The notes: generated by a model not told the origin, from the sequence alone. A stretch of DNA of 63,944 nt, filler included, from Octopus bimaculoides (GCF_001194135.2; 5 parts of 4 records of this genome joined end to end with filler, not necessarily neighbours in it); one strand, 5' to 3'. Positions 1 to 25,832 are shown, numbered from the whole stretch's first letter. Made by a program: numbers and translations.

Positions 1-400
1 GCTTCATGGCAGTGAAACATGGGATGTGACTGCTGAGTACATGCGTAGGCTCGCAAGGAATGAAGCCAGTATGCGCCGATGGATGTGTAATGTCAGTGTG
101 CATACGAGACAGAGTATTAGTACCTTGAGAGAAAAGTTGAACTTACGAAGCATCAGTTGTGGTGTGCAAGAGAGACGACTGCGCTGGTATGGTCATGTAG
201 CGAGAATGGATGAGGATAGCTGTGTGAAAAAGTGCCACACCCTAGCAGTTGAGGGAACTTGTGGAAGAAATAGGCCCAGGAAGACCTGGGATGAGGTGGT
301 GAGGCATGACCTTCGAACTTTGGACCTCACCGAGGCGATGACTTCTGACCAAGACCTTCGGAAATATGCTGTGCGTGAGAAGACCCGGCAAGCCAAGTGA
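1..400 (+). mobile_element. RTE-clade LINE, 3' end of ORF
   Basis: Open frame LHGSETW...RLRWYGHVARMDED...GRNRPRKTWDEVVRHDL, typical of the RTE ORF2 C-terminus. Confidence 0.9.
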
Positions 401-8319: not shown

Positions 8320-11300
8320 CAGGGATGTTATCCTGATGTTTAATAATAAGTCTCCAGAATCTTTGTTAGAATTCTTGCCAAATACAATATGGCACTTTTC
8401 TTCTGGTTGACAATGTGTGTCAATTCTAATATTCTTCAGCTTCTTAAGTAAAAGTTTGGGTGTTATGTCAAGTGCACTGATTATCACAAGAACAATTTTC
8501 ACTCTGGATATTTTTTTCTCTTTGGTAATCCACTCATATGATATTACAAAGTTTATATCTGATTTTTTTTTTCTTTGTTGTACTCTACAATCATATGCGG
8601 TCGTTTTGCTTCAGTAGTTTGGTCACTCTTTATGGAGAAATCCCAGAATTAGATATATTCTCATTCACAGCTTCTAGCTCATATCACTTTTCTGCTACTT
8701 TTAATCCACACACTTGGCTAACATCTCAATGCACTCTTTTATCAACACAGTCCCGTCTGCACTCTTTTTGTGTTATCTTCCTGCATGCACTTAAGAAATA
8801 TTTAATACTTTCATATCCTTATGTACAGATTTTACATTTGCTGTCTTAGTTTTATAACTTTGTATGTATTTATCAAGTACATCCCAATGGCTTGTTCAGT
8901 GATTCAGTTTCTCATTTCAGGTTTTCATGTCAGCTGCAAGCAACATTCTTCACTTTCAACTTCATTTGTTGTATGAAAAGATCATATAATTCCTTCTATT
9001 TTCAGCTATTTGTCCTATCAATCTTCCTTCTATTCTTGAAACTTCTCACAATTCTAGTGATTTTTTTTTGGGGGGGGGGGGGTATTTCTAGCCCAAGATT
9101 ATATTCTTTCATCATTATGTACAACATAGTTTTTAAACTCAATCACGATACTAATGGTGTCATTTGATTCCTTTCTTTCTTAGTAAAGTGGAGACTGTTG
9201 ATATTACTTTTAGAATAAAGGCGGTGCTCCAGCATGGCCGCAATCAAATGACTGAAACAAGTAAAAGAAAAAAAAACAAAAAAACTGTGAATTGAATAGC
9301 TTCTGAGTTTTTCCAATTCTTGTAGCTGTCTTGGTCCATTTTAGAAAAAGAGCAGGGTATCCTAGCAATGGTAAGGCCTATGTATTCAATGCTTTGATAA
9401 TATTCCATCTATTTACTTTTGTTTCAAGCACCTTTCTAAGCCTTCTTTTCTTCTAGAGACTTTCTCATTTCACTATCCATTACCTTTCCCTCCTGGGTAC
9501 TTGTATCCGTTATTTCTCAGTGATCTAGTACCATCTTGCATCTACATCAGATTTAATCTTTCAGCATCTCCTCATGATTAACACTGCACACTTATTCACC
9601 CCAATCTTTGCTGTTGGATCAGAGAATCCATTTCTTTTTGCATTTTTCATGTACAGTTCGATGTCATCCATATATAGCAGGTGATATATTTTCACTCTGG
9701 TCTTAGCAAACTTATAGACGGGCCTGGATTTTCTGAGTATGCTTGTCAGAAGGATTAACACTAAGATAAAAACCAATGGAGAGAGTGTATTTTCCTGAAA
9801 TATTCCCCTCTGCATTTCCACATTTCCAAATGATTCACTTCCACATATTAGTTTTACTAACCCTGATCTCTTTGCTTATTCTAAAAAAAGAACCTTTTCA
9901 TTGACCAAGTGTTCTCAGGCACTCTAAAAGCCAACAGTGTGGAACATTAGAATATATTTTCTTGTAGTCTATCCAGCCAACAGTAAAATGTTTTATTTGT
10001 ACCTTAATATCATGCTATCAACATAAGACCAGTAGTTCCTCTTCACTGGTAATAGATTCTCTCTTTCCTAAAGGCTATATAATTCATCTGCTATTGGGTC
10101 AATTTGTAATTTGCAGAGTAAGGGTAAGTATCTAATAGGCCTATAATTACAGAGTTACCCTTGCTTTTCTTCTTTTTTATTGATGTTGCCTCAATTTTTA
10201 TCTTCTTTCTTCTTCAACTACCAGTAATCCTGTCTCTAACACTTTCTTTGGAGCTCGTTTGTGTCTTTCCTTCACCATCTTTTAATTATTGCATTTATTC
10301 TTCCAAGATCACTGTTCAACTATATTCTCAAGTCTCCATTTCCAGTTTTTTTGTTTTTTTTTTGCTTGACATTTAACATCTGAAATTTCTAAGGTAATAG
10401 AAGTTGTCCAGTGTATGAAGATGTTTAAGTCTGTTACATTCTCAACATTGATTTTCATTAATATGAGGGGTGTTCATTAAAGATTTCCTCTGACCCACTT
10501 CCGGTTATTGCAAGAAACTGAACTTGTACAGGTATAATCATATATGTCTCTACATGTCATAGTGTAAATTGCAGCTCTCCACTAGTATTCGTTTGTCTTT
10601 TACAGCTGCTGAAGTGGACTAAGGTGTTATAATGGAGGTAGTTGAATGCAGATCAGTGATCAGGTTCTTACATTTGAAAGGCTGTACACCAAAAAAGACT
10701 TTTGATGAGATGAAAAAAGTTTATGGTGATGATGCACCATCAAACAACGTAGTCAAGCATTGGCATCATCAGTTCAAATGTGGTCGGATATGGGTGGAAA
10801 CTGCTCCTATTCCTGGATGACCACATTCTGCCATTGATGACAACACCATCCATAAAGTGGAAGCCACCATTTTGAAGAATCACCACATAACTATTCAGCA
10901 ACTAGCCCAAAAAGTAAAGATAAGTGTAGGGTCCATGGAAAAATCATGACCATTTGGACATGTGGGAGTTGTCTGCATGATGGATTCCCTGGATGCTCAC
11001 ACCTTTTCAGAAGTAGGAATGAGTCAGTTGCTCCCAGGCATTTTTGTCAACATGCCAAGAAAACAAGGACATTTTTGGCAGACTTATCACACAGGATGAA
11101 ACATGGGTCCATCACTATGATCCTGAGACTGAAGTTCAGTTGAAACAATGGAAGCATGGTAACTCATCACCTCCAAAGAAGGCTCATGTCCAACCTTCAG
11201 CAGGAAAGGTGATGTTCACAGTCTTTTGGGACCAGCACAGAGTAGTGATGATAGATTTTCTGGCAAAGGGCACCACAATAGGGCATATTATGCTTCTCTG

Positions 11301-11950
11301 CTGCAGAAATTGTGGGATGCCATCAAAGCAGAGAAGCATAGCATGCTGACCACAGGAATCCACCTCCTCCAAGGCAATACCCCAGTTCACAATGTGCATG
11401 TTGCCCAGATGAAAGCACACTCTTGTGGCTATGAAATCCTTTCTCATCCCCCTTACTTTCCTAACCTTGCACCTTGCACCTAAACTTCCACCTCTTTCCA
11501 ACCATGAAGTCTTTTTTGAAGGGGAAGCGCTTTTTGGATGAGGATGAACTTATTTCTGAAGCTCCAGACACAACCTACTGACTTCTAGAGATGAAGTCTT
11601 CACAGCTGCATAAAGCAATGGGAAAAGTGTGTTACCATTGGTGGTGGTTATGTAGAGAGGGACTAATAATTATGCCAAGTTTCATTTATTCCAGTCCTTG
11701 GGAAGTGGGTCAGGGGAAATCTTTAATGAACACCCCTCATAACTAGTCCAACCTCTTCACAACTTAGTTTTCCCCTTGATTCCACTCAAAGCTGGTAGCC
11801 TCATTTTTTCACTAGTTCATATCTCATTTAGCCATTGTAGTAAAAAGTTAAACTTGATTTGACCTTGGTGAATATTTCTCTCCTTTCTGTTGTTTCTTGT
11901 TCAATACATTTTTTTTACAGGCTTGTTTGTGTAGCAATATTTTGAATTCT
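8320..11950 (-). mobile_element. Degenerate RLE-type non-LTR retrotransposon (R4/HERO/NeSL-like), interrupted by a SINE and a mariner
   Basis: RT: RGIFQENTLSPLVFILVL...HLLYMDDIELY (9561-9821). C-terminus: IVLVIISALDITPK...QKSAILYLARILTKILE (8350-8500). WKWRLEN-like segment near 10330. Confidence 0.75.
10464..11739 (+). mobile_element. Full-length mariner (Tc1/mariner DD34D-type) transposon with disrupted transposase
   Basis: 39-bp TIRs (tgaggggtgttcattaaagatttcc(t/c)ctgacccacttcc, 1 mismatch), TA TSDs at 10462-3 and 11740-1, length 1276 bp. Transposase motifs ITQDETWVHHY, WKH, KVMFTVFWD, HPPYFPNLAP; stops and frameshifts present. Confidence 0.95.
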
Positions 11951-12294
11951 GTTATCATTAAGACCCTTTTTCCTAACTAGCAGGACCCATGAATATTTCA
12001 CAGAATTAATGGTAAACCTATTGGGTTATTTCTGGAAACATTATCCAAAAAACCTGAAAGTGTAGCCTGTATTGTGTCTGTATAGAAAGATAATCGCTCA
12101 TTTGCTACTCACTGAAAAGTGAAGGAAACTGGAATACAATGATTGCTTAATGCACCTTACATACTTTATGCACAATTTTATAGACTTCATGCACAACACT
12201 CATAAAATAAATATTCACTCTTATTTATCCATTTCCCCCGTAGACAAAGAAAAATATTCCGTACATGATACAACTTTTAGTTAAATTGCATATA

Positions 12295-13073
12295 CCATAA
12301 ATCCTCGAGTATAATCCGCATTTTTTTCCCAAAATTTAAAGGTCAAAATCCCTAGTGCATACTATATACGAGGTTAAAAATGAAAAATATTTTCTATGCA
12401 ATGTCCGAGTCTCTATTTGCTCTATTGTGATGTCGGGCACGAAAATACCTTAAGCTAAGCCTAAAAGCAATGAAGTCATAAAAGAATCATCCATAACTTC
12501 CAGTAAGCAACATTTATTATAATAAAAGTGTTGTATATCGTCTGCACTGGATGGTACTCAGGATGACGTTGTATGGAAAGATGAAATAAATGAAAGTGAA
12601 TCCTCTGATGTTGACTATGAATCTGACGATGACAGAGATTTACTCTACAATGATGCTGACATGTTTACAGAGGAACAAATGGAACAGTTATTTGATGCTG
12701 AAAGTGACGTTGAATTTGAAGGATTTGAATAAATGTTTTTGCTTTTGCTTTTGTAACTGATAGTAATAGTTATATGTAAAAGCAACTCACTTAATATTTA
12801 TTTTTCACTGACGTTATTACTGTTATTTCTTTATTTTCTGCTAACAAAGTGCACAAAAAAGCTACACGTTTGCATTATGTTATATACACAATAATAATAA
12901 AGGATATTACCGTTATATACGTTTACAAACCAAGGACGTTATATAGACCTCTTTGACTCAAGTTAGAGAAGGGGTGCGTATTATACACAAGGTTTAGGTT
13001 TTTCAGAGGTACAGCCCCCTAAAAATCCCCTGCATATTATATTCAAGGGCGGACTATACTCGAGGATTTACGG
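12295..13073 (+). mobile_element. Non-autonomous pogo/Tc2-like DNA transposon (internal deletion derivative)
   Basis: TIRs cc(a/g)taaatcctcgagtata(a/g)tccgc with TA TSDs. Internal 12526-12732 encodes KCCISSALDGTQDD...LFDAESDVEFEGFE*, the acidic C-terminus of pogo-family transposases. Confidence 0.85.
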
Positions 13074-14106
13074 TATTCGCCATGTAAATAAGCGTGAACA
13101 TTTCATGGAATTGCACTTAAGTGCATGTGTTAAGTGATATAAAAAATTTGGTTCATTAAAAAACAAAAAAAAATACACTTTTCACTACTCATGCACCACC
13201 ACCACCTCATCTTCCCCTCTCTCTGCCTCTCTTTAACCTCACCATCAGAACATCACCTGCTAAAATTATATTTCTAACTCTTTCACTACATCAATACCTA
13301 CAACCAACTTTTTTAACCACATAATAAATATTACACTCCCCCTACCACACATCATGGATGCTCTTTTTCTCTCTCCTTTCTGCCTCACTCTTCACCTTAT
13401 CCTCTTTTTCTCTCCTTATTCTTTCACCTCTCTTTCCCTTCAATTAATCACTTGAAAGTATTACAATTACATTCATGGATGCTTCTCTCTTTCTCTAGCC
13501 CACTTTTCATTCTCCCTCTTTTTCTCTAATCACGTGAAAGCTAAGTAACGTAATGACAAGCAAAATTATTATAAGATCTTTGCAGCTGTAATTGAATAAT
13601 GACCAGACCAAGCTTGTGTCATAGTAAGACTTGCTGTCAGAGAACTTTACTTGAGGATTAGTTTCATTAATGCAGTTGCAATAACACTTTATTTGGCATT
13701 GAACCCAGGGCTGTAGCATTACGATGTCAAACACCAATGTTTTTGTCAAGAACCACATCTGGGAGCCTGCCAGCCAAGGCTAAAGAGACCCTGCTTCTCT
13801 TTGTGGTAGGTCTAACCCTGCCAAGGGCAACCTTAGTGTATGGTCTCAGGCTACTGGTTACTCTCATGAATTGGTAGTATAGTGTATGATACTAACAACA
13901 AAAAATGCTGTTTAAATAGTTTCTGAGCAAGCTCATCCACTCTTTAACAGGTTTATTACTCTCCACCTTTGATAGATTTATTACTGTTATTATGGAGAAT
14001 TAAATTACATACAATATAAATTTAAGTGTTATAGTTTCAGTAGTAGAAGATAAGCATCTCAATGTGACTTTGTTTCATAATTTAACTTGTTCTTGTCTAA
14101 TTTTAG

Positions 14107-14237
14107 AGCTCTGCCAAGACCTTAACAAATGCTGATCGTGCATCTCTATTTTTGGTGGACATGCAACGTAAAGAATTATTTTCCCGAATATTTGATGCTG
14201 GTTCAGATCCAGAAAAATACATGTTAAATGATATCAG
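14107..14237 (+). CDS. PDE10A: PDE10A-like phosphodiesterase, internal exon (GAF-B)
   Basis: Acceptor ttttag and donor gttatt. 131 nt: SSAKTLTNADRASLFLVDMQRKELFSRIFDAGSDPEKYMLNDI(R), matching the PDE10 GAF-B motif AKxLVNADRxxLFxVD...IFD...EIR. Not in the ORF track (no start codon). Confidence 0.9.
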
Positions 14238-14789
14238 GTTATTTGCAAGTTGTATTTGTTTGATAATTGTATTGAATCTAAAATCATATGAAGAAATGAA
14301 AATTGTATCATCATGAATCACTGAGGGCATTTAAAACCCATATTGTCACTTTTGTATTTCTTGATGGTATTGTACACTATAAAGTGACAAGTTTCGAGGT
14401 ATTTCTACAACCTGATCACTGACAAGATTCCACTGCAGTTGAACTGTCAGCAACCAGGTCATAGAGGGATGACAAAACTTGATGCTTTAGTTGCCAATAC
14501 TATCAAGAAATATGGAACAGTTTAAGTGTGTGTTTTAGATATAACTGCGTTTGTACTTTAAATGACTTCTATGGTGTAATTGATGTCAAGTAAATACTGA
14601 AAAAAGAATAAAAGAATTAGAGAGTAAATGGATAATGGGTTGATAACTGAGTAATCTGTGAATAATTGAAGAGATTGACAGCAGAATGGTGGTGAGTAAT
14701 GTCTAGAGTAATGAGAGAGTAATGGTATGAGAGTTCTGTAGTGTCCTAGTCTATAATGTGTCTGATTCTCATTTGTGTCTACCCTTCAA

Positions 14790-15125
14790 CCTTGTACCTG
14801 CAAGTCTCACTTCATTCTTGGGAGAGATGGTATCTGACTTCACATATGAGTAGAAGCCTAAAGCAGCAATTCATTCACAAAAAGGACAGACCCTGCCAGA
14901 ATGGATATTTACAAGTATCAACCACAGTGCTTAAAGTTGTATTTCAAATTCTACCAGTCAATACATTCCCCTTTACGTGATAAGATGGGTTGACCAAACC
15001 ACTCATCAAAGAGCTACTTTGACCCAAGATATTCTCTGATGTTTGTTTCAGGGCTAAAGGTCCAATTGTATCCAATCTTAACAGTTTTAAGCAGATTAAT
15101 GGCATTGACCTCAAAAAACCATTTT
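14790..15125 (+). mobile_element. Highly decayed CR1/Jockey-group RT fragment
   Basis: FIHKKDRPCQNGYLQVSTTVLKVVFQIL resembles PIHKKGDR..NYRPISLTSVLCKVFE, followed by IDLKKPF resembling DLKKAFD. Confidence 0.4.
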
Positions 15126-15469
15126 AGTTGACAGATAGGTACCAAATAATGGGAAAGAGTTAACCACAGTTGAAAAATAAATTAAAAATACATTTAAATA
15201 AAATGGCTAAATTAAGAGTTAAATAAAAAGTATTTTAATAACGCTTTCTAAAATAACATAAGTCACATTTCAGAAGGAGATGGTATTTCATTATGCCACC
15301 ATATTATACTATACTACTCATGTAAATTTTAAAAAATGCTAATAGTTAGAGACAATGTTTCAAAACTCTTACCATAGTAGAATAAAATGAAAGCAAAACA
15401 GTTTCAAGATTTTGTAATCAAGTTAGTTAGAAAAACCTGTTGTTACATAACACTTTTGATTAAGTGAAA

Positions 15470-17775
15470 AAATATCGTCATCAACTGAAATAGACATGTA
15501 GGAGTAAGTTGGCAGTTGAATTTTTTGGATTTGGTTTTCACAATGAAAACGGAACCAAGCTGCTGAAGTTCTGTGATGCAAATTATCTTATGATCTGCAA
15601 TAGTAACTTCAGGAAATCTGCCAACTACCTGTTCACCTACCAATCCAGTGATAGGAAATGGGAAAGATAGCTAAATGCCAAAATTTTCCCAGTTAAGAAT
15701 GCACCCCACCAACATAGGTCAGTTGTTAGTGACGTCAGGATCAGGGATAAATGGTTGCCCAGAAGATGATCATTGTGGAAAAGAAAGGTGTGGAAGCTTA
15801 AGGATCTTCTAAATGGACAGAGATTTAAAGACGTATTACATGAAGATTTTGACGGAAACGAGGACAACTGGAGGTTCCTATGGGACAACCTGTTGAAGGC
15901 AACTGACCAGATCTGTGGCTAGTGCAAAGTCCCCTCTTGACCTGAGGTAACATAGTGGTGGAACAATGTAGTTGACAGGGTCATTAGAGAAAAGAAACAG
16001 GCCTGGAAATATGGTAGTTGGGAACTGTATCAGATATCCAGAAGGAAAGGTAGGAAACAGGTATAGTTAGCCAGAGGGGAAGTAGAAAAGAAGAGGTTTG
16101 TTATTGTTCTGCATCATGAGTACCAGAGACTTGAAGTGTTTCAAATTGCAAGACAATGTGCGAGAGAAAATCACGATGTCATAGGAGAGAAATGTATCCA
16201 CATGGATGATGGCTCACTGGAATTTAACGATGCAGCAAAGAAAGAGGCTTGAAAACACCACTATGAAGAGAATGATTGGGAGAAAGAGAGTCTGCCAAAT
16301 GTTGACCGAACTAAGGAACCAGCTATCCGAATCAACAGTACTTCGGTAGATAAAGTAATTAAGGATATGAAAACAGGGAAAGCCCCCAGCCCTTCAGGAA
16401 TCACTGTTGAGATGCTTAAAATATCTGATGATGTAGGCTATGGTCTAGTCACCTGTATAGTTAACCATGTGGTACATGAAGGAGTCATACCCAATGACTG
16501 GTGTAGCAACAACCATGGCAAATGTTACAAAGGTAAAGAGATGCCTTAGAAATAATTACAGGAAGAATCAAATTGTTGGATCAGGTGATGAAAGTTATAG
16601 AGAGAGTCATAAGCCCAACTTATTAGGGAAATAGTTAGCTTAGATGTAGTTTGGTTTTGTGCCAGAGAGAAGCACCACTGATGCTATATTTCTGGTAAGA
16701 CAGCTGCAGGAGAAATGCCTAGCCAAAGAAATCTCTGTTCTTGGCTTTTCTTGACATGGAGAAAGCCTTTGATAGGGTCCTCCTGATCCTTTATCTAGTG
16801 GTCAATGCAGAAATTAGGGATTAAGTGGTTGGTGACAGCTATACAAGCCATATACAGGAATGTTGTCAGTAAGGTGAGGGTTGGCAACAAGTATAGTGAA
16901 GAATTTGGGGTACAAATAGGGGTTCACCAAGGATGATTCCTCAGCCCCCTCTTGTTCATCATAGTCCTCCAAACAATAACAGAGGAATTCATGACAGGCT
17001 GCCCGTGAGAGCTCCTCTGTGCTGATGATCTTGCTCTTATAGATGAATCACTACCAGAACTAGAAGAGGTTTCAGGTGTGGAAGTAAGGTCTAGAATCGA
17101 AGGGCCGTAGAGTTAACCTAGTAAAAACCAAAGTCTTAGTTAGTAGGAAGGCAGACAAATCACAAATCCCTTCAGGTAGATGGCCCTGCTTGATCTGTAG
17201 AAAATGCATAGGTAAAAACTCCATAAGATGTACTTGGTGTAAGCTATGGCCACATAAGAGGGGCAGTAATATCAGAAGGTTATCATGGAAGATAGTCTTT
17301 TTTGTGTGGAAAGTGCACAGATACAATTAACACTAAAAATGTACAGAGAATAGATTCCATCATGTGCCAGTGGGGAAAACTAGTAGTAGTCGATAACTTC
17401 TGTTACCTAAGGTGACTAGGTCAGCAGTGGGGGGGGGGGTATGCTCTAAGAGCATAGCTGCTAGAATACAAATAGGCTGGGCAAAGTTGAGAGAGCTCCT
17501 TCCTCTGTTGATAGTAAAGGGCATCTCGCTCAGAGTGAAAAGATGTCTGTACAAACAGCCATATTACATAGCAGTGAAACATGGGCTGTGACTGCCAAGG
17601 ACATGCAGAGATTTGTAAGAAATGAAGCTAGTATGCTTATGGATGTTAAATGTCAATGTGCATGCACAACTGAGTGTAAGCATCCTGAGAGAAAAGTTGG
17701 GCATAAGAGATATCAGATGTGGTGAGCAAGAGAGACAACTGTGCTGGTATGGTCATGTGATGCATATGGATGAAT
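15470..17775 (+). mobile_element. Degenerate RTE-clade LINE (APE endonuclease end, RT, C-terminus); same family as 1-400
   Basis: NGTKLLKFCDANYLMICNSNFRK, KTGKAPSPSGITVEMLK, FLDMEKAFDRV, GVHQG, LLCADDLAL, ILHSSETWAVTAKDMQR, WYGHVMHMDE. Confidence 0.9.
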
Positions 17776-18270
17776 ACAGGTTTCCTTGATGCTGCTGGTT
17801 TTCAATGATTATCTTTACTTCCCAGCAGCTTTAATTGAGCTGACCTGAATCAAATGTATTCCAGCTGGGACATACTGTCTTGTTTTGTGGTGACCACAAT
17901 ATCTAGGACTATATTATCCTGCATGTCCTCCTGTACATAGACAGACAGATGAACTTTTAGAGATTTGACTGCAATTTATAGCAGATCAAGTAGCCAAGTA
18001 GGTTCCCTTCCTTGTCTCATGAAGTCTAGGATTTTTAGATGGCAAGGTGTATTGTATTGGGTATATTTTGAAATATATTTGTGACACACATGAAGTCCCT
18101 TCAGCTGAAACTGAACCCACTATTAAACAATGCTGTTCTTAATGACTTGTAGGTTCATGGTATTATGTTATGTGGAGATAACATAATAATGTAAAAGTGC
18201 ACTACTAACACAGGAATGTAAATTGGTGTATCCAATGACTATACACTATATATAGTGGCTATTTAAGCAA

Positions 18271-19099
18271 TGTGTTTGAGAATGATTAATGGCTTAGATG
18301 TGTGCTGATGAAGGGGCAAAATCTCCTGAAATATGGCAGATATGCCCATTTTCCACTTTTCATCTTTGATCTTATTGTTGACATTTGAGGTTTCATATAC
18401 AGAACATGGTAACAAAAATCAGTGTTGGCTATAGAATATCTGCACAGATAACCATTCTTGTCATAAATTTACATATTTCTTCAATAAAAGGATAGAGTCC
18501 AGATAGGAAAGGAATCAATAAGGTATCAGACAGCCAGCAAGAAGTTTGACAGGATTGGCCAGGAGGTTGCAGACATAAATCAGAGAAGATAACTGTATAC
18601 TGGCACTACTATTATTTCTGTGTTGTGTCCTATGGTAAAGACATAGGTACTGAAATGGAGTACAGTTCATTGTGTTTCAATAGCTTTTCAATATTAAGTT
18701 CAATTCTTTTGAAGGGACAGGAGAAAGTAGTGGCTAGTCATACTAGTCTGAGACAAGAAGAAACTAAATCTTTAGTGAGACACAATAACCCACTCAATAG
18801 CATCATGTACTAGTCAAAACTCTTCATTAGATTTGTAGGAAATATTTAGGCCTTCACAGAGGAAGTGAATTAGCAATAAATTGCTAAGATTAAAAACAAA
18901 TGAAATATCAGTTCCTGGGACAGCATTCTATCCTGTGGCATTTATAAACGCGAGTCTTTTGGATGGAGCCAACTGATGTAGTGAAGCCAATCATAGTGTT
19001 TCGAAGATGAAAAGTGGGCAATGGGTACATCTGCCATATTTCAGGGGATTTTGCCCCTTCATCAGCACCCATTTAACCCATTAATCATTCTCAAACACA
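18271..19099. repeat. ~99-bp inverted repeat pair (18271-18369 / 19001-19099), each containing a hammerhead-like core
   Basis: tgtgtttgagaatgattaatgg...ctgatgaaggggcaaaatc(t/c)cctgaaatatggcagat...acttttcatctt(t/c)ga present in both orientations. Confidence 0.85.
19020..19073 (-). ncRNA. Candidate type I hammerhead ribozyme
   Basis: AAUGGGUG-CUGAUGA-AGGGG(CAAAAU)CCCCU-GAA-AUAU(GGCAG)AUGU-A-CCCAUU, GUA cleavage triplet. Stem I requires a bulge. Confidence 0.4.
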
Positions 19100-19904
19100 C
19101 TGGTTTTAATACAGACAAGAAATGAATGATTCAAATTCAGACATTAGAAAGATGAAACTATGATGGTCTTCACAAAACATCACTATAAACACAAATTGAT
19201 AAAATAACAGACAGAATGCCTTCTGGTATCATATCTCTTTACATTGTGAGGTCATTAGTATAAATGGGAGGATGAGAAAATAAGTACCAGTAAGGGTAGG
19301 CAATCAGTATAATCAACTATCTCCATCCCCTAAAGCAACACTTCAGAGATTATAGTATCTATTTCATAGAATCTGCCCCCACCCCACCACCCTCCACTCA
19401 CAAACTTCACAATGTAAGAATTTGAAATTATGTTCAAAGCTGCAGGAATGAAAGAAATTGATTATAGTAGCTTTCTGTATTTAGTTCAAATCAATATTGA
19501 CCTTGTCTTTCAATTCTTTGACGATTCATAAAATTAGTCACTTACTGGAGGTTGATTTGTTACCAACAAAGGTGTCTTGTAAAAGAAGTAAAAATGTTAG
19601 AAGCCAATAGTATATCAGTATGTACATACTTGTACACTTATTTTCAATGTGAGAAAAGGTATTCCAGGCATATCACTGGTCTGATGAACCTTTATGTCTA
19701 GAATTTGTCTCAGCAGTTCAAGTTTTTGGTAGATCAATTAGTCTCTGCAGCAGTAGAAATATTTAAAATTTAATCTTAAAATTAAATGATTTGTTAAAGG
19801 TTATACAATTAGTTTATTAAACATTGTTAGATAAATATTTACACTTGAACTTCAAAAGACATTATGGAACTGTATAAAGTTTGAACAAATTATGCTCATT
19901 TCAG

Positions 19905-19997
19905 ATTTTCTATCAATAAAGGTGTTGCAGGATATGTTGCCTCAACTGGGGAAATATTAAATATACCAAATGCTTACCAAGATTCAAGATTTAACAG
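19905..19997 (+). CDS. PDE10A: PDE10A-like phosphodiesterase, internal exon (GAF-B)
   Basis: Acceptor catttcag and donor gtaaat. 93 nt, phase 2/2: (R)[30 protein letters not shown](R), cf. PDE10A [31 protein letters not shown]. Confidence 0.92.
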
Positions 19998-21133
19998 GTA
20001 AATAATTCAAAGTTCATTAGAATTTAGTATACAGCTCTCTTCCTTACATAATGCAATTAATATCTCAATGCTAATCAAATTAATCAATGGGAATAATTGT
20101 AACACTCCTGGAAAAAAATGGAATTACAGTTATTTTTTTTCAGAGACATTTGTTACCAAGAAATTTTGTTAAAACTCAAGTATATCTTTCAATATCAAAT
20201 CAATGTCTTAAAGACAAAAAAGAAAAAAAAAATAGAAATCAAGGTTTTGTAGACTTTATAACCCAAGAATATTCAAGTTTTTGGATAAGCACCCCCTCTT
20301 AAAACAGACTTCTTTTTTTTTTAATCAAGCAATTTTTTCCAATTTATACTTTGAAGCATTAGAGATATTTTATTGTGTCCAAGGAGAGTCATCCTCTTTT
20401 AGTGCCTTGTTAATTTAACACACTCACTGGTCTGATTTCCACTCATTTATTTAAAAAGTTTTCGTGGTTTCATGCAACCTTTTCAATAGTCGTTGACTGC
20501 CCATTATCAGAACTGCGTTTTGTGAGCGTGTGTGTGCATGCACATGTATGTATATGCATGTGCACACGTTTGTATACATGTATTCTGCATATCCATGTGC
20601 TTGTGTGTTCATATTTGTATGTGTACGTGACTATATAAACTGAGGGTATTGGGGTACAACACCTATATATATTTCCTATTTAGTACTGGGGGCATTTCAT
20701 TAATGAAGATGTACAAGTAGGAAACAGGTGTTATATCCCAATTCCAACAGCTTATATAGTCACACAAACCCAGACAGACACGCAAGCACATGCAGAACAC
20801 ACACACATACGTGCACACGTACGTACGTGCGTGTACACACACACACGTGTATGCGCACGCACACCACGCATGCACACACAAAAAAACGCAATTCCGATAA
20901 CGGGCAGGGTCAACAACTATTGAAAAGGTTGCAAGATGTAATGAAAATTTTAGCAAAAATAAATGAGTGGAAATCAGACCGTTGTGTTAAACTTATAAAA
21001 GCACTAAAAGAGAATGACTCCCCAGACACAAAATATGCTTCGAGACACGAATTCCCATAAAGAATCTTGCAAACGAAATAAAATAAGCACTAGAGGTATT
21101 CTGTAAAAAAAAAAAAAGAAAAAAAAAATGTTG

Positions 21134-21912
21134 GGCGCTGTCATGGTATTAGCTGTCAGAATTGAAAGTAGAACTGACAAGGAACGTTACTGCTGGTTTG
21201 AGTTGATTCTTTGGCTACTGACTAGCCGGAGCTATCTATCTGTCTGTCTGTCTCTCTCTCTCTATATCTATCTATCTATCACTCGTTCACCTCTGTTCGT
21301 GTCCGTAGAATTTATCAAATTAGAAAACGCAAATTTAATATAAAAATATATTTTCTGAAATTGCAAATTATTTAAAATATAAANNNNNNNNNNNNNNNNN
21401 NNNNNNNNNNNNNNNNNNNNNNNNNNNNNNNNNNNNNNNNNNNNNNNNNNNNNNNNNNNNNNNNNNNNNNNNNNNNNNNNNNNNNNNNNNNNNNNNNNNN
21501 NNNNNNNNNNNNNNNNNNNNNNNNNNNNNNNNNNNNNNNNNNNNNNNNNNNNNNNNNNNNNNNNNNNNNNNNNNNNNNNNNNNNNNNNNNNNNNNNNNNN
21601 NNNNNNNNNNNNNNNNNNNNNNNNNNNNNNNNNNNNNNNNNNNNNNNNNNNNNNNNNNNNNNNNNNNNNNNNNNNNNNNNNNNNNNNNNNNNNNNNNNNN
21701 NNNNNNNNNNNNNNNNNNNNNNNNNNNNNNNNNNNNNNNNNNNNNNNNNNNNNNNNNNNNNNNNNNNNNNNNNNNNNNNNNNNNNNNGAGAGAGAGAGAG
21801 AGCGAGAGCTCCGGCCAGTCATGGTTTGGAGTTGATTCTTTGGCTACTGACAGCAGTAACGTTCCTTGTCAGTTCTACTTTCAATTCTGACAGCTAATAC
21901 CATGACAGTGCC
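21134..21912. mobile_element. MITE with long TIRs and 8-bp TSD (superfamily uncertain: Merlin/hAT/MULE-like), spanning a gap
   Basis: TIR ggc(g/a)ctgtcatggtattagctgtcagaattgaaagtagaactgacaaggaacgttactgctg at both ends. TSD aaatgttg at 21126-33 and 21913-20. Confidence 0.85.
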
Positions 21913-21992
21913 AAATGTTGCTACTGGAGCAGAGACAAGCGGGGTGGGATTGAAATTCTTCCCATCAGAATCATAGACCTTGATTTAAAAAA

Positions 21993-22340
21993 ACATGGAT
22001 GTGTGGTGAGAAGTTTGCTTCCCAACTACATGGTTCCAATTTTAGTCCCACTGCGTGGCGTGGCATGGCACCTTAGGCAAGTATCTGCTGCTATAACCTC
22101 AAGCCGAGCAAAGCCTTGTAATAGGATTTGGTAGATGGAAACTGAAAGAAGGTTGTGAGTGTGTAACCACCACTTTACATGTGATGGTGTGTTTATGCCT
22201 CCGTAACTTAGCGGTTCGGCAAAAGTATCTGATAAGAATAAGTAACAGTAAAAAGTACTGGAGTCATTTCATTCGACTAAAAATTTAAGACGGTGCCCTA
22301 GCATGATCGCAGTCTAATGACTGAAATAAGTAAAATAAAA
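21993..22340 (+). mobile_element. tRNA-derived SINE family B
   Basis: gtgtggtgagaagtttgcttcccaac...ccactgcgtggc...gtaacttagcggttcggcaaaag...ctgaaataagtaaaa. Related copies at 34637-35040, 36715-36860, 43085-43221, 49755-49895, 55152-55680 and partial reverse copies. Confidence 0.8.
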
Positions 22341-23715
22341 AAATGGCATGAACCGTTTGCTGTTAAACACTAGAAAGACAAGACTTCAGAACCAACTTTA
22401 ATTCTAAATTTGAATGCCTCATGTCTGATGATAAATTTTCCAGTCAATAAATAAGTACTCTATTTGAATCGTTATAGAACTTCAATTCCTAGAGCATTTC
22501 TTACTTAATGTTGATGTCATTTTACTTCGATTTCGATACTCATTTGCTTTGTCCAAAAATTCAAATTTAAGGTCTCTTGTAAAAACTTTTTAAAAAATGT
22601 TCTTAAACAATTGCATCGCTTTAATCGATACAGTTACATAGTGATTTTTTAAATTTCAAAAGCCTGAAGTAAATTTGCAAATAAAAACAACACATCCATT
22701 TATATTGGTGACCGGAAGGGAAACTCGATGAGCGATCAGATGGCAAGAAAAAAAAACATAAGAAAAGGCTTATATATATATATATATATATACACTTAAA
22801 CATAACTGAAGCTACGTCAATAAAACTGGTAATAAAATGGACTTACATCAATATAAAACAAATGGGCTTCCTCACTTCTAGTTAAAGCTTAGTTACGAGA
22901 AGAATCAGAGGAAACCGACATGGCAGGAACCAGTTTACATAACCGAGTAGCTTAATGAACTACCAAAACATTTGTATAAAATTTTAATAAAAATTTAAAT
23001 AGGTAGCATTGAAACTCCAGTTTTACCTAAAATTTAATTTTGGAATAAAGTTTTGAAATATATTTATACAATAATTAAAAAAAAAAATAAGGAAAAAACT
23101 TCATAGATAATTCGTTCCACTTTACATAAAGTTTTATATACAAATTGTGGATTCAGTCAATTTAAATTGCATTAGAAAGGTTAACTGTTTATATAGAAAT
23201 CATGAATTAATAAAATATTAAATCTACAACAAAAGCTGCTAACAAAGTTAAATTAAAATTTAATGATCGGATCTCCCGATGTCAAACTTAAGGTTGTAGC
23301 AGAAGTTGTAAAACCCGGTTAACCAACCTGCATTTTTTTTTTCTTTTTTAATGACAAAATATATTTGAAACCTGTCCAAGGTGAAGAAAAGTGGATATTT
23401 GGTAAAGATATTTATAAATGTAAGTGTTGAAGTGTGTAAAGTTTATAAATTCAAGTGGGACAACGTGATACGTTTGACATTAGTAGTCATTGAGATGGTG
23501 ATTCAGTCTATCGATTTTTAGCGTTAAACAATGGTCATTTCCAACAGTTGTCAAGTGATCTTTCATCAATTACAAAATCTGAGAGAAATCTCCAGGATTA
23601 TTGTAATTATTTTCAACGTTGCAAAACAAGTGTTTCAAAGAAATAAGTTTAGATTATTAGGATTGATAATTGAATTTTAAATCTCGTATGTTAAGCGTGC
23701 TATAAATCGACCCAA

Positions 23716-24648
23716 CTATAAATAACCACCGGGTAACCGGCGAAAAAACGTATCGTTCCAATTCATAGGGTAATGGTCAATCGCAGAATATTCCTGCTGC
23801 TCAGTTAAATAATCGAGGTTACTGTCATGACTTTGATTACTATAAGGGGTAGCGACAAATGGAATCTTTGGAGTTAAGTAATGAAAATTTTGCGGATAAA
23901 ACAGTGGTAGATAAGAGGGATTAATCTGTATATTATCTGTTTGCGGGCTATAATTATCTCCTGGTGGAGCCTGATACTGAAAACTAGGGTTGCTTTCATC
24001 TCCAGGATTCACATAGGAACCAGATTTATATGGAAGATGTGGCTGGTAAGTAGTACGAAGAAAACTTGACGGAAGGAGCGTGGGATTTTTAAGTGTAGTA
24101 TTTTTAGAATACAACTTTTTTCTTGTTGCACGAGTTACAACAATTTGTCTTCCATTTACTTGAATTTTACTGTGTAAAACACATTTGTCCACAGAATCGA
24201 TGTCGTCAAAGCAGAGAAAGACAAAGCCCGTGTATTTACCAGCATGGTTTATTACCCACTCCAGTTTTTGTACAGAGCCGTAATTGGAGAAAACTTTCCA
24301 AATCTCTTCTTCCCGAATGTCTTTCCTAAATCTTCCAGCATAAATTTCCATAATATTCCGTAATTCACCAGGGTTCTTATAATACGGCATGGCTCGCCTA
24401 GTTTCTACACATCGATTATCTATGATGTGAGGCCGACTGGATTGTATTTCGTCTAAAGTGGAAGCTTCCTTAAATACCAGAAAACTGAAACCTTTTGATA
24501 CCCCCGTTGCTGGATTTCTTACGACAACACAGTCAATCACTTTACCCCATTGTTCGAAGTAAGTCTTCAATGAAATTTCATTTGTTTCTCGACTTAGACC
24601 TCCAACGAATAATTTGCGGTATTTCTTTGCCTCCATACTGACCTCCAT
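23716..24648 (-). CDS. Intronless hnRNP A1/A2-family two-RRM RNA-binding protein (likely retrogene), ~310 aa
   Basis: Uninterrupted ORF (first ATG 24648, second ATG 24636). RRM1: RKLFVGGLSRETNEISLKTYFEQWGKVIDCVVVRNPATGVSKGFSFLVF...RPHIIDNRCVETRRAMP. RRM2: ...GKYTGFVFLCFDDIDSVDKCVL...VNGRQIVVTRA. Both align to the hnRNP A1 UP1 motifs. Low-complexity P/Y/S/Q/N tail. Confidence 0.9.
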   Translation of the reverse strand: MEVSMEAKKYRKLFVGGLSRETNEISLKTYFEQWGKVIDCVVVRNPATGVSKGFSFLVFKEASTLDEIQSSRPHIIDNRCVETRRAMPYYKNPGELRNIMEIYAGRFRKDIREEEIWKVFSNYGSVQKLEWVINHAGKYTGFVFLCFDDIDSVDKCVLHSKIQVNGRQIVVTRATRKKLYSKNTTLKNPTLLPSSFLRTTYQPHLPYKSGSYVNPGDESNPSFQYQAPPGDNYSPQTDNIQINPSYLPLFYPQNFHYLTPKIPFVATPYSNQSHDSNLDYLTEQQEYSAIDHYPMNWNDTFFRRLPGGYL

Positions 24649-25584
24649 CACAGACAAAATAAAAAAAAGACTACACCCAGTTTCTTATTCACAGGTTTGC
24701 ACTACCTTGATTATATCCCCGTTTATGACTTCATATATGACCATTTCTTAAAAGAAATAATCTGGATTAGTCAATTATTCTTTGATTAATCAAAAGTCTA
24801 ATTGAATGATATTTTCTATCTACAATCCAGTGGTTGTGGTTTCGATTCTGACCTGCGTCAACAACATGGATTTAACGTTTAAAACAAGAAAGAAAAGAGG
24901 TCGATGCAATGACGAACGCGAACGAAATATGAACGACTGAAAGTTGATCTAATGTTATACTAACTTGATATAATATCACAGAGGAGTTAATTTTCAGATG
25001 ATCGCCATCCCTTGGTTACACGAATCTGCAACTAATTTCGCTCATTCCACAAAAGAAAATATATATATGAAAGTCACATAAGCTCATTCCTGCTCTTATT
25101 GAAATACATAGAGTAAAAGACTGTGAAAGACTTCATTTATCAAAGAAAAAGGTATGTAGAGTAGTAGAAATAGTAGAAATGGTACAGCTTTCTATTTTGT
25201 TTGTATTTAGTCGCCAGGTCAGTTCTGATTGCGTACAGCTATGACCATTCAGAGCAATGTAGGACACTATTATCTGATGTGGCTTTCACGACATTAGATT
25301 ACAGATATTTGGTTACAATTTCTAATAGATTAAGCGGTCGCATAGAGGCTCCACAGTCTTAGTTTTGACTATATTCTGAAGTTCTGAGTTCAGATCTTTC
25401 GAGGGTTAAGTGTGTGTGTGCGTGCGTGCGTGCGTGCGTGTGTGTGTGTGTGTATTTTTCTTCCCTCGTAATGATTTAGGAGTTGAAGTAGCTGTTATAT
25501 GGACTGTTAGATATGTAATTCGTCTGACGTTCCGTGTGTCATGTGGTTCGTCTGAGTTCATTGTTTCATTGTTGTTGTCTTGTG

Positions 25585-25832
25585 GGACTACTAGCAAGAA
25601 CTGCTGTTTATTGGCCTGGTATCGATGCTGCTATAGAGATAGCCAGTCGACGATGTGATTCATGTAACGAACATCAAAGGCAGCCATCTAAGCCTCCAGT
25701 TCACCCATGGATGTTACCAGAAAAGCCGTGGAGCCGCTTACATCTGGACCATGCAATAAATTTTATGGGTAGAGATTGGCTGGTGATCACAGATGCTTAT
25801 TCCAAGTACCCATGCATTCATCCTACTTCCTC
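25585..25832 (+). mobile_element. Ty3/Gypsy LTR retrotransposon integrase fragment
   Basis: LARTAVYWPGIDAAIE...CDSCNEHQRQPSKPPVHPWMLPEKPWSRLHLDHAINFMGRDWLVITDAYSKYP (zinc-binding region plus start of RVE); truncated by a gap. Confidence 0.9.

What the first reader, a model, noticed from the sequence alone, without database searches (positions are those of the whole stretch)
23716..24648. Intact, intronless, fast-diverged hnRNP A1-like gene nested antisense in a PDE10A-like intron
Seen: a 310-codon ORF with two RRMs and no stops or frameshifts, in a region where every recognised TE-derived coding sequence of comparable length is broken. It lies opposite to, and ~3.7 kb downstream of, PDE exon 19905-19997. 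Known: canonical hnRNP A/B genes are multi-exonic and highly conserved, and PDE10 needs the rest of GAF-B plus the catalytic domain 3' of that exon. Inference: this is a retrocopy that kept an open frame despite heavy divergence, i.e. a probable lineage-specific, selected RNA-binding protein, possibly germline- or neuron-restricted. The only gap between the PDE exon and this gene is bridged by one MITE's matching TIRs and TSD, which supports the adjacency.
Basis: partly seen in the sequence, partly recalled or inferred. Interest (0 to 1): 0.78.

Follow-up and report, generated by a model that had tools for sequence, protein, structure and literature searches.

The report
Ancient nested cephalopod hnRNP A paralogue
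The open reading frame is a real, selectively maintained, intronless RNA-binding gene of the hnRNP A type. It has sat antisense inside the same PDE10A-like intron since before octopuses and cuttlefish diverged, so it is an old, already annotated but unstudied gene, not a young octopus-specific retrocopy.

Summary
Window 23716-24648 (-) is an uninterrupted 310-codon ORF with two RRMs, and its best matches are human hnRNP A1 and A2/B1 (UP1). It lies 3.7 kb from a genuine PDE10A GAF-B exon on the other strand.

- The gene is not lineage-restricted to octopus. Intact, intronless orthologues exist in O. sinensis, another octopodid, Argonauta, a cuttlefish (Acanthosepion esculentum) and a second decapodiform.
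- In that second decapodiform it lies next to the same PDE10A exon in the same antisense orientation.
- Purifying selection is strong: omega is 0.05-0.15 in the RRMs and 0.2-0.6 in the tail, and dS is saturated between octopus and decapodiforms.
- The RRMs carry 37 family-specific fixed replacements. The glycine-rich tail is replaced by a Pro/Tyr/Asn/Ser-rich disordered tail found nowhere else among 1.84 billion representative proteins.
- The retrocopy inference is weakened. A gastropod hnRNP A gene has at least 8 coding exons, but the closest canonical cephalopod paralogue (cuttlefish HNRNPA1_3) is itself intronless.

Gene models for it already exist (XP_029638910.2, GAB1608630.1, and the window's own protein). 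Expression and function remain untested.

The parts
23716..24648 (-). Single-exon CDS of the hnRNP A-like gene: 310 codons plus the TAG stop at 23716-23718.
   Evidence: The exact protein is already a gene model in UniRef/EukProt (P0135). It is 95% identical to O. sinensis XP_029638910.2.
24388..24618 (-). RRM1 (about residues 11-87). RNP2 reads KLFVGGL and RNP1 reads KGFSFLVF. The aromatic residues F14, F54 and F56 are kept.
   Evidence: F14, F54 and F56 are invariant over 98 hnRNP A sequences; pLDDT above 90.
24124..24351 (-). RRM2 (about residues 100-175). RNP2 is changed to IYAGRF and RNP1 to TGFVFLCF: Phe to Tyr at 103, Gly to Arg at 106, Arg to Thr at 140. All three changes are fixed within the family. 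D149 and D151, which pair with R72 and R85 (the UP1 inter-RRM salt bridges), are kept.
   Evidence: Foldseek to UP1/hnRNP A2B1, target-normalised TM-score 0.86-0.92 over both RRMs.
23719..24120 (-). C-terminal tail (residues 177-310). It is rich in Pro, Tyr, Asn, Ser, Leu and Gln, with only 2-4% Gly, no RGG repeats and no Pfam M9 domain. It is predicted disordered. Scattered residues are invariant (LPS..L at 192-197, D217, Y225, P235, Y251, N254, Y257, P260).
   Evidence: pLDDT 32-41. In one search only one representative in 1.84 billion matches beyond profile position about 190 over the full length. Tail omega is 0.2-0.6.
24649..25380 (-). Upstream block, a candidate promoter and 5'UTR. It is 93-96% identical to O. 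sinensis over most of its length (91% in the bin next to the ATG). That is close to the CDS (93-98% per bin) and above the 87-90% of the 3' flank. It contains a TATA-like GATATAAT about 60 nt before the ATG.
   Evidence: The promoter function is inferred, not shown.
19905..19997 (+). Exon of the host gene (PDE10A-like, GAF-B domain), on the opposite strand and 3.7 kb beyond the 3' end of the nested gene.
   Evidence: The same exon is 97% identical in O. sinensis L001 12734-12826. It is 84% identical in decapodiform contig L003 13351-13443, antisense and 3.0 kb 3' of the orthologue.
20070..21950 (.). Insertion absent from O. sinensis, lying between the PDE exon and the nested gene. It holds the assembly gap and a MITE-like element with 65-nt terminal inverted repeats (21131-21195 / 21851-21915).
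   Evidence: (the flanks are 25 nt apart in L001).

Best explanation
This is a functional, protein-coding, single-exon paralogue of hnRNP A. It was inserted antisense into the intron that follows a GAF-B exon of the PDE10A-like gene, and this happened before the last common ancestor of octopuses and cuttlefish/squid.

The source was most simply a processed mRNA, or an already intronless hnRNP A gene, of the cephalopod lineage.

On the stem branch the copy changed quickly. It fixed 37 replacements in 169 RRM columns and altered the RNP motifs of RRM2. Its Gly/RGG/M9 tail was replaced by a Pro/Tyr/Asn/Ser-rich disordered tail. It has been held under purifying selection ever since.

Inferred mechanism: the two RRMs keep the UP1 architecture, the stacking aromatic residues and both inter-RRM salt bridges. 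The protein should therefore bind single-stranded RNA (or DNA) as hnRNP A1/A2B1 do. Specificity at RRM2 is probably altered. The new tail probably brings different partners, localisation signals or condensation behaviour.

Shown here: the ORF, the domain identity, orthology, conserved nesting and selection. Inferred: RNA binding, the role of the tail, transcription from its own promoter, and retroposition as the duplication route.
For: - ORF and domains.
- Six intact single-ORF orthologues: O. sinensis, an unnamed octopodid, Argonauta (full ORF 307 aa), an ENA decapodiform contig, and two alleles or species of cuttlefish. Run ERR12945500, which carries the cuttlefish protein, is Acanthosepion esculentum according to bioRxiv 10.1101/2025.04.22.649952.
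- Conserved position and orientation beside the same PDE10A exon in O. sinensis and in the decapodiform contig.
- Selection: omega is 0.05-0.15 in the RRMs, 0.2-0.6 in the tail and 0.12-0.37 overall. Bootstrapped pN/pS stays below 1. dS is saturated between octopus and decapodiforms.
- Phylogeny: the family is monophyletic (100% bootstrap) inside mollusc hnRNP A. Its nearest group in the point tree is the cephalopod canonical group, and 3 of 4 singly shared derived states are with that group.
- Structure: residues 10-175 have pLDDT above 90. Foldseek gives target-normalised TM-scores of 0.86-0.92 to UP1/hnRNP A2B1, against about 0.46 to other tandem-RRM proteins.
- Key residues F14, F54, F56, F144, R72, R85, D149 and D151 are invariant across 98 hnRNP A sequences.
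- The tail is unique and glycine-poor.
- A gastropod hnRNP A gene has introns at three places inside the RRM region, all absent here.
Against: - No direct evidence of transcription or protein was obtained. The cuttlefish contigs that end in long A runs may be RNA-seq or genomic.
- The sister relation to the cephalopod canonical group has only 25% bootstrap support on a long branch.
- Retroposition is not demonstrated. No poly(A) relic or target-site duplication is recognisable, and the nearest canonical paralogue is itself intronless. A DNA-level duplication of an intronless gene is therefore equally compatible.
- The RRM2 RNP changes (R140T, G106R) could weaken RNA binding rather than retune it.
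- The AF2 inter-domain geometry may be inherited from an alignment made mostly of canonical hnRNP A sequences.
Confidence: 0.8

Rival explanations
1. One reading: a young, octopod-lineage-specific retrocopy of a multi-exon hnRNP A parent that has happened to keep its frame and is newly under selection.
For: The CDS is intronless. The sequence is heavily diverged. A gastropod hnRNP A gene is multi-exonic.
Against: Orthologues with the same tail exist in Argonauta, a cuttlefish and a second decapodiform. In that second decapodiform (L003) and in O. sinensis the gene lies beside the same PDE10A exon. dS is saturated between the two sides. The closest cephalopod canonical gene is intronless.
Confidence: 0.03
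2. A DNA-level (segmental or transposon-mediated) duplication of an already intronless cephalopod hnRNP A gene landed in the PDE10A intron. The retroposition that removed the introns happened earlier, in the ancestor of all cephalopod hnRNP A genes.
For: The cuttlefish canonical gene HNRNPA1_3 is a single exon collinear with its 1.6-kb transcripts. A second canonical-like cuttlefish paralogue (P0156) also sits uninterrupted on contigs that look genomic. No poly(A) or target-site-duplication relic is found at the nested copy. The surrounding intron is full of transposons and MITEs.
Against: Only the transcribed unit was copied; no flanking homology to L029 was seen. Insertion of a gene-sized piece about 1-1.5 kb long into an unrelated intron is the typical footprint of L1/RTE-type retroposition. 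After more than 200 million years the hallmarks of either route would be erased, so the two cannot be told apart.
Confidence: 0.3
3. A decaying retropseudogene, or a chance or annotation-driven ORF with no protein function. Conservation would then be due to a role as non-coding or regulatory DNA of PDE10A.
For: No expression data were obtained here. The gene lies in an intron whose other coding remnants are broken. The upstream block is also conserved, so some conservation could be regulatory.
Against: Synonymous sites are saturated while the frame is intact in six lineages. pN/pS is 0.06-0.17 in the RRMs, and no bootstrap replicate reaches 1. Structural and RNA-contact residues are retained. 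Constraint acts in a codon-periodic way, which non-coding function does not explain.
Confidence: 0.03

Closest known systems
hnRNP A1 / A2B1 / A3 (vertebrates), Hrb87F/Hrb98DE (insects), and mollusc hnRNP A homologues
   Same: Two tandem RRMs with the UP1 arrangement. The RNP aromatic residues and both inter-RRM salt bridges are kept. These proteins are the best sequence and fold matches. The family is placed inside mollusc hnRNP A in the tree.
   Different: RRM identity is only 40-52%, with 37 fixed family-specific replacements. RRM2 has the RNP1 Arg changed to Thr and the RNP2 Gly changed to Arg. There is no Gly-rich, RGG or M9 tail; a unique Pro/Tyr/Asn/Ser-rich tail stands in its place. 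The gene is a single exon nested in another gene.
Canonical cephalopod hnRNP A (cuttlefish HNRNPA1_3, CAE1164079.1/CAE1164076.1; proteins P0153, P0154 and P0156)
   Same: It belongs to the same lineage and is also intronless. It shares the derived states K9, N45 and K128 and is the nearest group in the point tree.
   Different: Its tail is 53% glycine with RGG repeats. Its RRMs are 66-72% identical to gastropod and bivalve proteins, so it evolves slowly. It sits at a different locus, not in PDE10A.
Functional retrogenes of RNA-binding proteins in mammals (for example HNRNPA1L2, RBMXL2/hnRNP G-T, PABPC3, CSTF2T); cited from general knowledge, not tested here
   Same: They are intronless copies of multi-exon RNA-binding protein genes, kept by selection and often lying inside introns of unrelated host genes.
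   Different: The mammalian cases are mostly young, close in sequence to their parents, and testis-biased. This gene is shared across coleoid cephalopods, is strongly remodelled, and has unknown expression. Its immediate parent may itself have been intronless.

Membership tests
hnRNP A/B (UP1-type 2xRRM) proteins | Two tandem RRMs with conserved RNP1/RNP2 aromatic residues | tested here: met
   Pfam RRM_1 twice. F14, F54, F56 and F144 are invariant, F142 is nearly invariant, and Y103 replaces Phe.
hnRNP A/B (UP1-type 2xRRM) proteins | UP1 inter-RRM geometry fixed by two Arg-Asp salt bridges (A1 R75-D155 and R88-D157; the A1 numbering is from general knowledge) | tested here: met
   R72, R85, D149 and D151 are invariant over 98 sequences. 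Foldseek gives a target-normalised TM-score of 0.86-0.92 and rmsd 1.7-2.5 A to UP1/A2B1 over both RRMs, against about 0.46 for Hrp1, Sxl and HuR. Caveat: the alignment used for the model is dominated by canonical hnRNP A sequences.
hnRNP A/B (UP1-type 2xRRM) proteins | Closer to hnRNP A than to hnRNP D, Musashi, DAZAP1 or TDP-43 | tested here: met
   PDB ranking: A2B1/A1 at E 1e-39, hnRNP D-like at 5e-24, Musashi at 1e-14. The NJ tree puts the family inside mollusc hnRNP A, with hnRNP D as outgroup.
hnRNP A/B (UP1-type 2xRRM) proteins | Glycine-rich C-terminal low-complexity domain with RGG box and M9/PY-NLS | tested here: not met
   The tail has 2-4% Gly, against 30-53% in the human-type, gastropod and cuttlefish canonical proteins. 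Pfam PF11627 (HnRNPA1) does not hit. No other protein matches the tail.
Processed retrogene | Lacks all introns present in the parental gene family | tested here: met
   The Candidula hnRNP A gene spans 8.6 kb with at least 8 coding exons. It has introns after aa 89, 129 and 198 inside the RRM region. All six orthologues here are uninterrupted.
Processed retrogene | A multi-exon parent exists in the same lineage | tested here: not met
   The closest cephalopod canonical gene (L029, Sepia/Acanthosepion pharaonis) encodes 341 aa in one exon. It is 99.9-100% collinear with four RNA contigs. Other cephalopod paralogues and Nautilus were not examined.
Processed retrogene | Poly(A) tail relic and flanking target-site duplication | tested here: inconclusive
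   In Octopus an ATTAAA followed closely by a 10-A run lies 364-383 nt after the stop. In cuttlefish an ATTAAA followed by a 14-24-A run lies 30 nt after the stop. Sequence beyond the cuttlefish A run is conserved with the other decapodiform, and no target-site duplication was found. These marks are expected to be erased at this age.
Nested antisense intronic gene | Lies wholly within an intron of a host gene, on the opposite strand | tested here: met
   The O. sinensis annotation shows a 774-aa GAF+PDEase_I gene on the opposite strand running over both ends of the 20.9-kb locus. The window is collinear with that locus. The same neighbouring exon is present in the decapodiform contig.
Functional (non-pseudogene) coding sequence | Intact frame across species and dN/dS well below 1 | tested here: met
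Functional (non-pseudogene) coding sequence | Transcribed and translated | not testable with these tools
   The only hints are gene models in RefSeq, GenBank and EukProt and cuttlefish contigs of uncertain library type that end in A runs.

The most novel reading that the evidence does not exclude
Coleoid cephalopods may have replaced the ancestral multi-exon hnRNP A gene entirely with retrogenes. One further copy would then have been captured in the PDE10A intron and remodelled into a new RNA-binding protein with altered RRM2 and a novel Tyr/Pro-rich disordered tail. That would make it a coleoid-specific addition to the RNA-processing machinery, kept for the whole history of the group and possibly co-regulated with PDE10A in neurons or germline.
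Probability: 0.2. Interest if true: 0.6.

Novelty: new member of a known kind. Interest (0 to 1): 0.4.

Why it matters
hnRNP A proteins are core regulators of splicing, mRNA transport and stress-granule biology, and they evolve very slowly. This is a strongly remodelled paralogue that has kept the UP1 nucleic-acid-binding core but swapped the glycine-rich, prion-like tail for an unrelated disordered tail. It has also stayed nested in the same host intron since before octopuses and cuttlefish separated.

That makes it a natural experiment in how low-complexity tails determine the behaviour of an RNA-binding protein. It is also a candidate lineage-specific component of cephalopod RNA biology.

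The side finding that the canonical cuttlefish hnRNP A gene is itself intronless hints at retrogene replacement of a housekeeping gene. None of this changes a known paradigm. The gene is already annotated, and nothing about its function is yet known.

Tried and rejected
- **Chance ORF:** rejected by shuffles and stop-codon frequency.
- **tRNA or structured RNA in or around the gene:** none found (ARAGORN; Rfam at E<=1).
- **Young octopus-specific origin:** rejected by the Argonauta and decapodiform orthologues.
- **Organisms of the Logan/ENA samples:** four accession searches were run. Only ERR12945500 could be tied to a species. The organisms of SRR11869385/91, ERZ21867824 and SRR8281xxx remain unnamed.
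- **Cephalopod parent by searching with a gastropod protein:** no cephalopod appeared in the 120 rows listed. It was recovered instead through the family profile and a cluster look-up.
- **Pomacea gene structure:** the look-up found no record.
- **AF2 with only the 8 family sequences:** the model was unusable, mean pLDDT 44.6. It was repeated with 98 sequences.
- **Poly(A) or target-site-duplication relics:** nothing diagnostic.
- **Upstream motif conservation between octopods and decapodiforms:** the MAFFT alignment shows only short patchy matches and blastn found none, so no claim is made.
- **YN00 estimates:** these failed for saturated pairs. NG86 and uncorrected pN/pS with bootstrap were used instead.
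- **Literature on this gene:** none found.

Full report

Yes. On the minus strand an ATG at 24648 opens a 310-codon frame that ends with TAG at 23718-23716. The stop-free stretch is 322 codons; the next longest in the 24.3 kb of non-N sequence is 139. In 200 mononucleotide shuffles the maximum was 179. With a stop-codon frequency of 0.07, the chance of 310 open codons at one place is about 1.7e-10.

Pfam finds two RRM_1 domains at E 3.6e-21. Against PDB sequences the best matches are the two-RRM fragments of human hnRNP A2/B1 and A1 (UP1). They reach E 2.5e-39 to 1e-37 over residues 5-178, far ahead of hnRNP D-like (5e-24), Musashi (1e-14) or TDP-43 (8e-15).

Positions 19905-19997 on the plus strand are bounded by ag and gt, and in phase they encode [31 protein letters not shown]. 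The best PDB match is human PDE10A GAF-B (2ZMF residues 86-116), with 23 of 31 residues identical and 38 bits, against 25 bits for PDE5.

Adjacency does not depend on them. The window is collinear with O. sinensis chromosome CM016865.1 from 11283 to 25492. In that species the two sides of window 20070-21950 lie 25 nt apart, so this stretch is an insertion private to the window's species.

**2. Orthologues and nesting**

The word-indexed protein search returned five clusters with full-length similarity:
- O. sinensis XP_029638910.2 (95% identity, 309 aa).
- An unnamed octopodid from Logan runs SRR11869385/91 (83%).
- Argonauta hians GAB1608630.1 (67%; annotated as partial, but the genomic ORF runs to 307 aa).
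- An ENA contig of 17.7 kb (54%).
- A Logan cluster (53-55%).

The exact window protein is itself already in UniRef, EukProt and MetaClust. The last cluster occurs in run ERR12945500, which the Sepia officinalis genome preprint identifies as Acanthosepion esculentum, a cuttlefish. The ENA sequence groups with the cuttlefish sequence (100% bootstrap, RRM identity 92%), so it too lies on the decapodiform side.

A profile of the family was searched against every one of 1.84 billion 50%-identity representatives. Only one representative matched over the full length. Apart from two long multi-domain proteins that were not examined (P0283, P0302), every other listed hit matched the RRM part only. In the word-indexed search the score drops from 527 bits for the weakest family member to 224 bits for the next protein.

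In every genomic locus the CDS is one uninterrupted ORF. In O. sinensis the annotation places the gene on the strand opposite a 774-aa GAF + PDEase_I gene that runs over both ends of the 20.9-kb locus. In the decapodiform ENA contig the same GAF-B exon (84% protein identity, 82.5% nucleotide identity) lies 3.0 kb beyond the 3' end of the orthologue, again on the opposite strand. The nested arrangement is therefore older than the split between octopuses and cuttlefish/squid. From general knowledge that split is a few hundred million years old; the saturation of synonymous sites reported below is consistent with this.

**3. Selection**

On a codon alignment of the six orthologues, Nei-Gojobori omega takes these ranges:

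| Region | omega |
|---|---|
| RRM region | 0.05-0.15 |
| Tail | 0.2-0.6 |
| Whole gene | 0.12-0.37 |

Bootstrapping codons, uncorrected pN/pS never reached 1 for the RRM region in any pair. For the whole gene it reached 1 in only 1 of 1000 replicates, in the closest pair. For the tail the comparisons over longer distances are also clearly below 1: Win-Arg 0.42-0.76 and ENA-cuttlefish 0.25-0.49. Only the two closest pairs have intervals that touch 1. Between octopus and decapodiforms pS is 0.84-0.91, which is saturated, yet the frame is intact on both sides.

**4. What the protein looks like**

Across an alignment of 98 hnRNP A-type sequences the window protein keeps every invariant residue. 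These include the RNP aromatics F14, F54, F56 and F144. They also include R72, R85, D149 and D151, which correspond to the two Arg-Asp bridges that lock the UP1 RRMs together (the A1 numbering is from general knowledge).

AlphaFold2 with that alignment gives pLDDT above 90 for residues 10-175 and 32-41 for residues 179-310. Foldseek against the PDB returns UP1 and hnRNP A2/B1 two-RRM structures with target-normalised TM-scores of 0.86-0.92 and rmsd 1.7-2.5 A over about 175 columns. Other tandem-RRM proteins reach about 0.46. The alignment is dominated by canonical sequences, so the domain arrangement is partly borrowed from them.

The family differs from all canonical proteins at 37 of 169 RRM columns by replacements that are fixed within the family. 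Examples:
- G55S in RNP1 of RRM1.
- F103Y and G106R in RNP2 of RRM2.
- R140T at the first position of RNP1 of RRM2.

The tail is the larger change. It has 2-4% glycine, against 53% in the cuttlefish canonical protein, 43% in a gastropod and 30% in an A1-like primate protein. It is rich in Pro, Tyr, Asn and Ser, and has no RGG repeats and no Pfam M9 domain. Some tail positions are invariant from octopus to cuttlefish: LPS..L at 192-197, D217, Y225, P235, Y251, N254, Y257 and P260.

I infer a single-stranded nucleic-acid-binding protein of the UP1 type with retuned RRM2 and new interaction or localisation properties. None of this was measured.

**5. Origin: is it a retrocopy?**

A gastropod hnRNP A gene (Candidula, 344 aa) spans 8.6 kb with at least eight coding exons. 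It has introns after residues 89, 129 and 198 within the RRM region. The cephalopod gene has none of them. Somewhere in its ancestry the introns were removed, most simply through an RNA intermediate.

However, the closest canonical relatives recovered by the family profile (P0153, P0154, P0155, P0117, P0156) turned out to be cephalopod proteins. The P0153 cluster contains 'HNRNPA1_3' of Acanthosepion (Sepia) pharaonis. Its genomic locus encodes the whole 341-aa Gly-rich protein in one exon. Four RNA contigs of 1.56-1.65 kb from three projects are 99.9-100% collinear with the genome, from about 125 nt upstream of the ATG to about 500 nt downstream of the stop. The deposited model CAE1164076.1 splices out of this ORF into what look like spurious 3' exons.

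A second canonical-like paralogue (P0156, 299 aa) occurs in the same A. esculentum runs. It sits uninterrupted on contigs that end in microsatellites and therefore look genomic.

The nested copy may still have arrived by retroposition, since a 1-1.5 kb transcribed unit dropped into an unrelated intron is the usual footprint. A DNA-level copy of an intronless gene cannot be excluded, and no poly(A) or target-site-duplication relic survives to decide.

A neighbour-joining tree of the RRM region places the family inside mollusc hnRNP A and next to the cephalopod canonical group in the point estimate, but with only 25% bootstrap support on a very long stem. Three of the four derived states shared with exactly one group are shared with the cephalopod canonical group.

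**6. Surroundings**

The 730 nt upstream of the ATG (24649-25380) are 93-96% identical between the window and O. sinensis over most of their length (91% in the bin next to the ATG). That is close to the CDS (93-98% per bin) and above the 3' flank (87-90%) and most of the intron (84-90%). This suggests a promoter and 5'UTR; there is a TATA-like GATATAAT about 60 nt before the ATG. This is inference. Similarity to decapodiform upstream sequence is too patchy to use. No tRNA or Rfam family lies in 22000-25832.

**7. Comparison with what is known, and novelty**

The protein works like an hnRNP A/UP1 RNA-binding core. It fails the family's C-terminal definition (the Gly-rich, RGG, M9 tail). It is best described as a divergent, coleoid-wide paralogue of hnRNP A.

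As a genomic object it resembles functional retrogenes of RNA-binding proteins known from mammals (general knowledge). It differs in being far older, much more remodelled, and possibly derived from a parent that had already lost its introns.

Gene models for it exist in at least three species, so its existence is not new. I found no paper that discusses it. I rate it a new member of a known kind, of moderate interest (0.4). The more novel reading is retrogene replacement of hnRNP A in coleoids plus neofunctionalisation of a captured copy. That reading is open but unproven.

**8. Verdict**

Nested, intronless, diverged and selected all hold.
- 'Lineage-specific to octopods' is wrong.
- 'Retrocopy of a multi-exon parent' is not established.
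- The proposed expression pattern is untested.

Noticed in passing
L029 (Acanthosepion/Sepia pharaonis CAHIKZ030000256.1) 876-2527; CDS 1001-2026: The canonical Gly-rich cuttlefish hnRNP A gene (HNRNPA1_3) is a single exon. Its 341-aa ORF and its UTRs are collinear with four RNA contigs (L007-L010). The deposited model CAE1164076.1 (406 aa) leaves the ORF at aa 309 for apparently spurious downstream exons. Two CCAAT-type CATTGGCTGA motifs lie just upstream. This may be retrogene replacement of a housekeeping gene in cephalopods.
   Followed up: partly
L002 (Argonauta hians BAAFZT010000068.1) 13321-13379, strand opposite the RRM gene: The PDE10A GAF-B exon has good ag/gt borders but is 59 nt instead of 93. 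An internal deletion of about 34 nt shifts the frame and creates an in-frame TAG. No PDE gene is called in this locus, while the nested RRM gene is intact. This is either an assembly error or decay or skipping of the host exon in Argonauta.
   Followed up: no
L030-L034 (Acanthosepion esculentum runs ERR12921336/40, ERR12945498/500, ERR14857108): A second canonical-like hnRNP A paralogue (P0156, 299 aa, 81% RRM identity to P0153) sits as one uninterrupted ORF on 2.0-2.6-kb contigs, four of which end in (AT)n microsatellites and look genomic. Cuttlefish therefore have at least three intronless hnRNP A-type genes.
   Followed up: partly
window 20070-21950: This stretch is absent from O. sinensis, where the flanks are 25 nt apart. 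It contains the N gap, a MITE-like element with 65-nt inverted repeats (21131-21195 / 21851-21915) and a 26-nt direct repeat, and a separate long imperfect palindrome at 20371-21035 around a CA/GT-rich microsatellite.
   Followed up: partly
window 24649-25380: The upstream block is 93-96% identical to O. sinensis over most of its length, close to the coding sequence and above the 3' flank and the rest of the intron. Similarity collapses beyond 25400, where a CA-rich microsatellite and an integrase fragment begin.
   Followed up: partly
L006 1046-1064; 3' ends of L018-L027; window about 23334-23353: In cuttlefish a genome-encoded ATTAAA followed by a run of 14-24 A lies 30 nt after the stop codon, and its length differs between runs. 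In Octopus species an ATTAAA followed closely by a 10-A run lies about 330-375 nt after the stop. These could be a polyadenylation site, a slippage-prone run or a remnant of a retrocopy tail. The data do not distinguish these.
   Followed up: partly
window 26-400 (+), 9561-9821 (-), 11044-11483 (+), 25534-25830 (+): Broken transposon coding remnants: a mariner-type transposase fragment (Pfam Transposase_1, E 5e-11), weak reverse-transcriptase and integrase H2C2 fragments, and an ORF at 26-400 with no Pfam hit. The first 505 nt of the window match O. sinensis locus L001 over 520 columns (85%), and part of that stretch matches L001 a second time (77%).
   Followed up: partly
L004/L005 (unnamed octopodid) 276-296: The codon homologous to the window's first ATG is not ATG in this species. 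The only in-frame Met is the one aligned with residue 5 of the window protein. The first four to seven residues are therefore variable, and the start codon used may differ between species.
   Followed up: no
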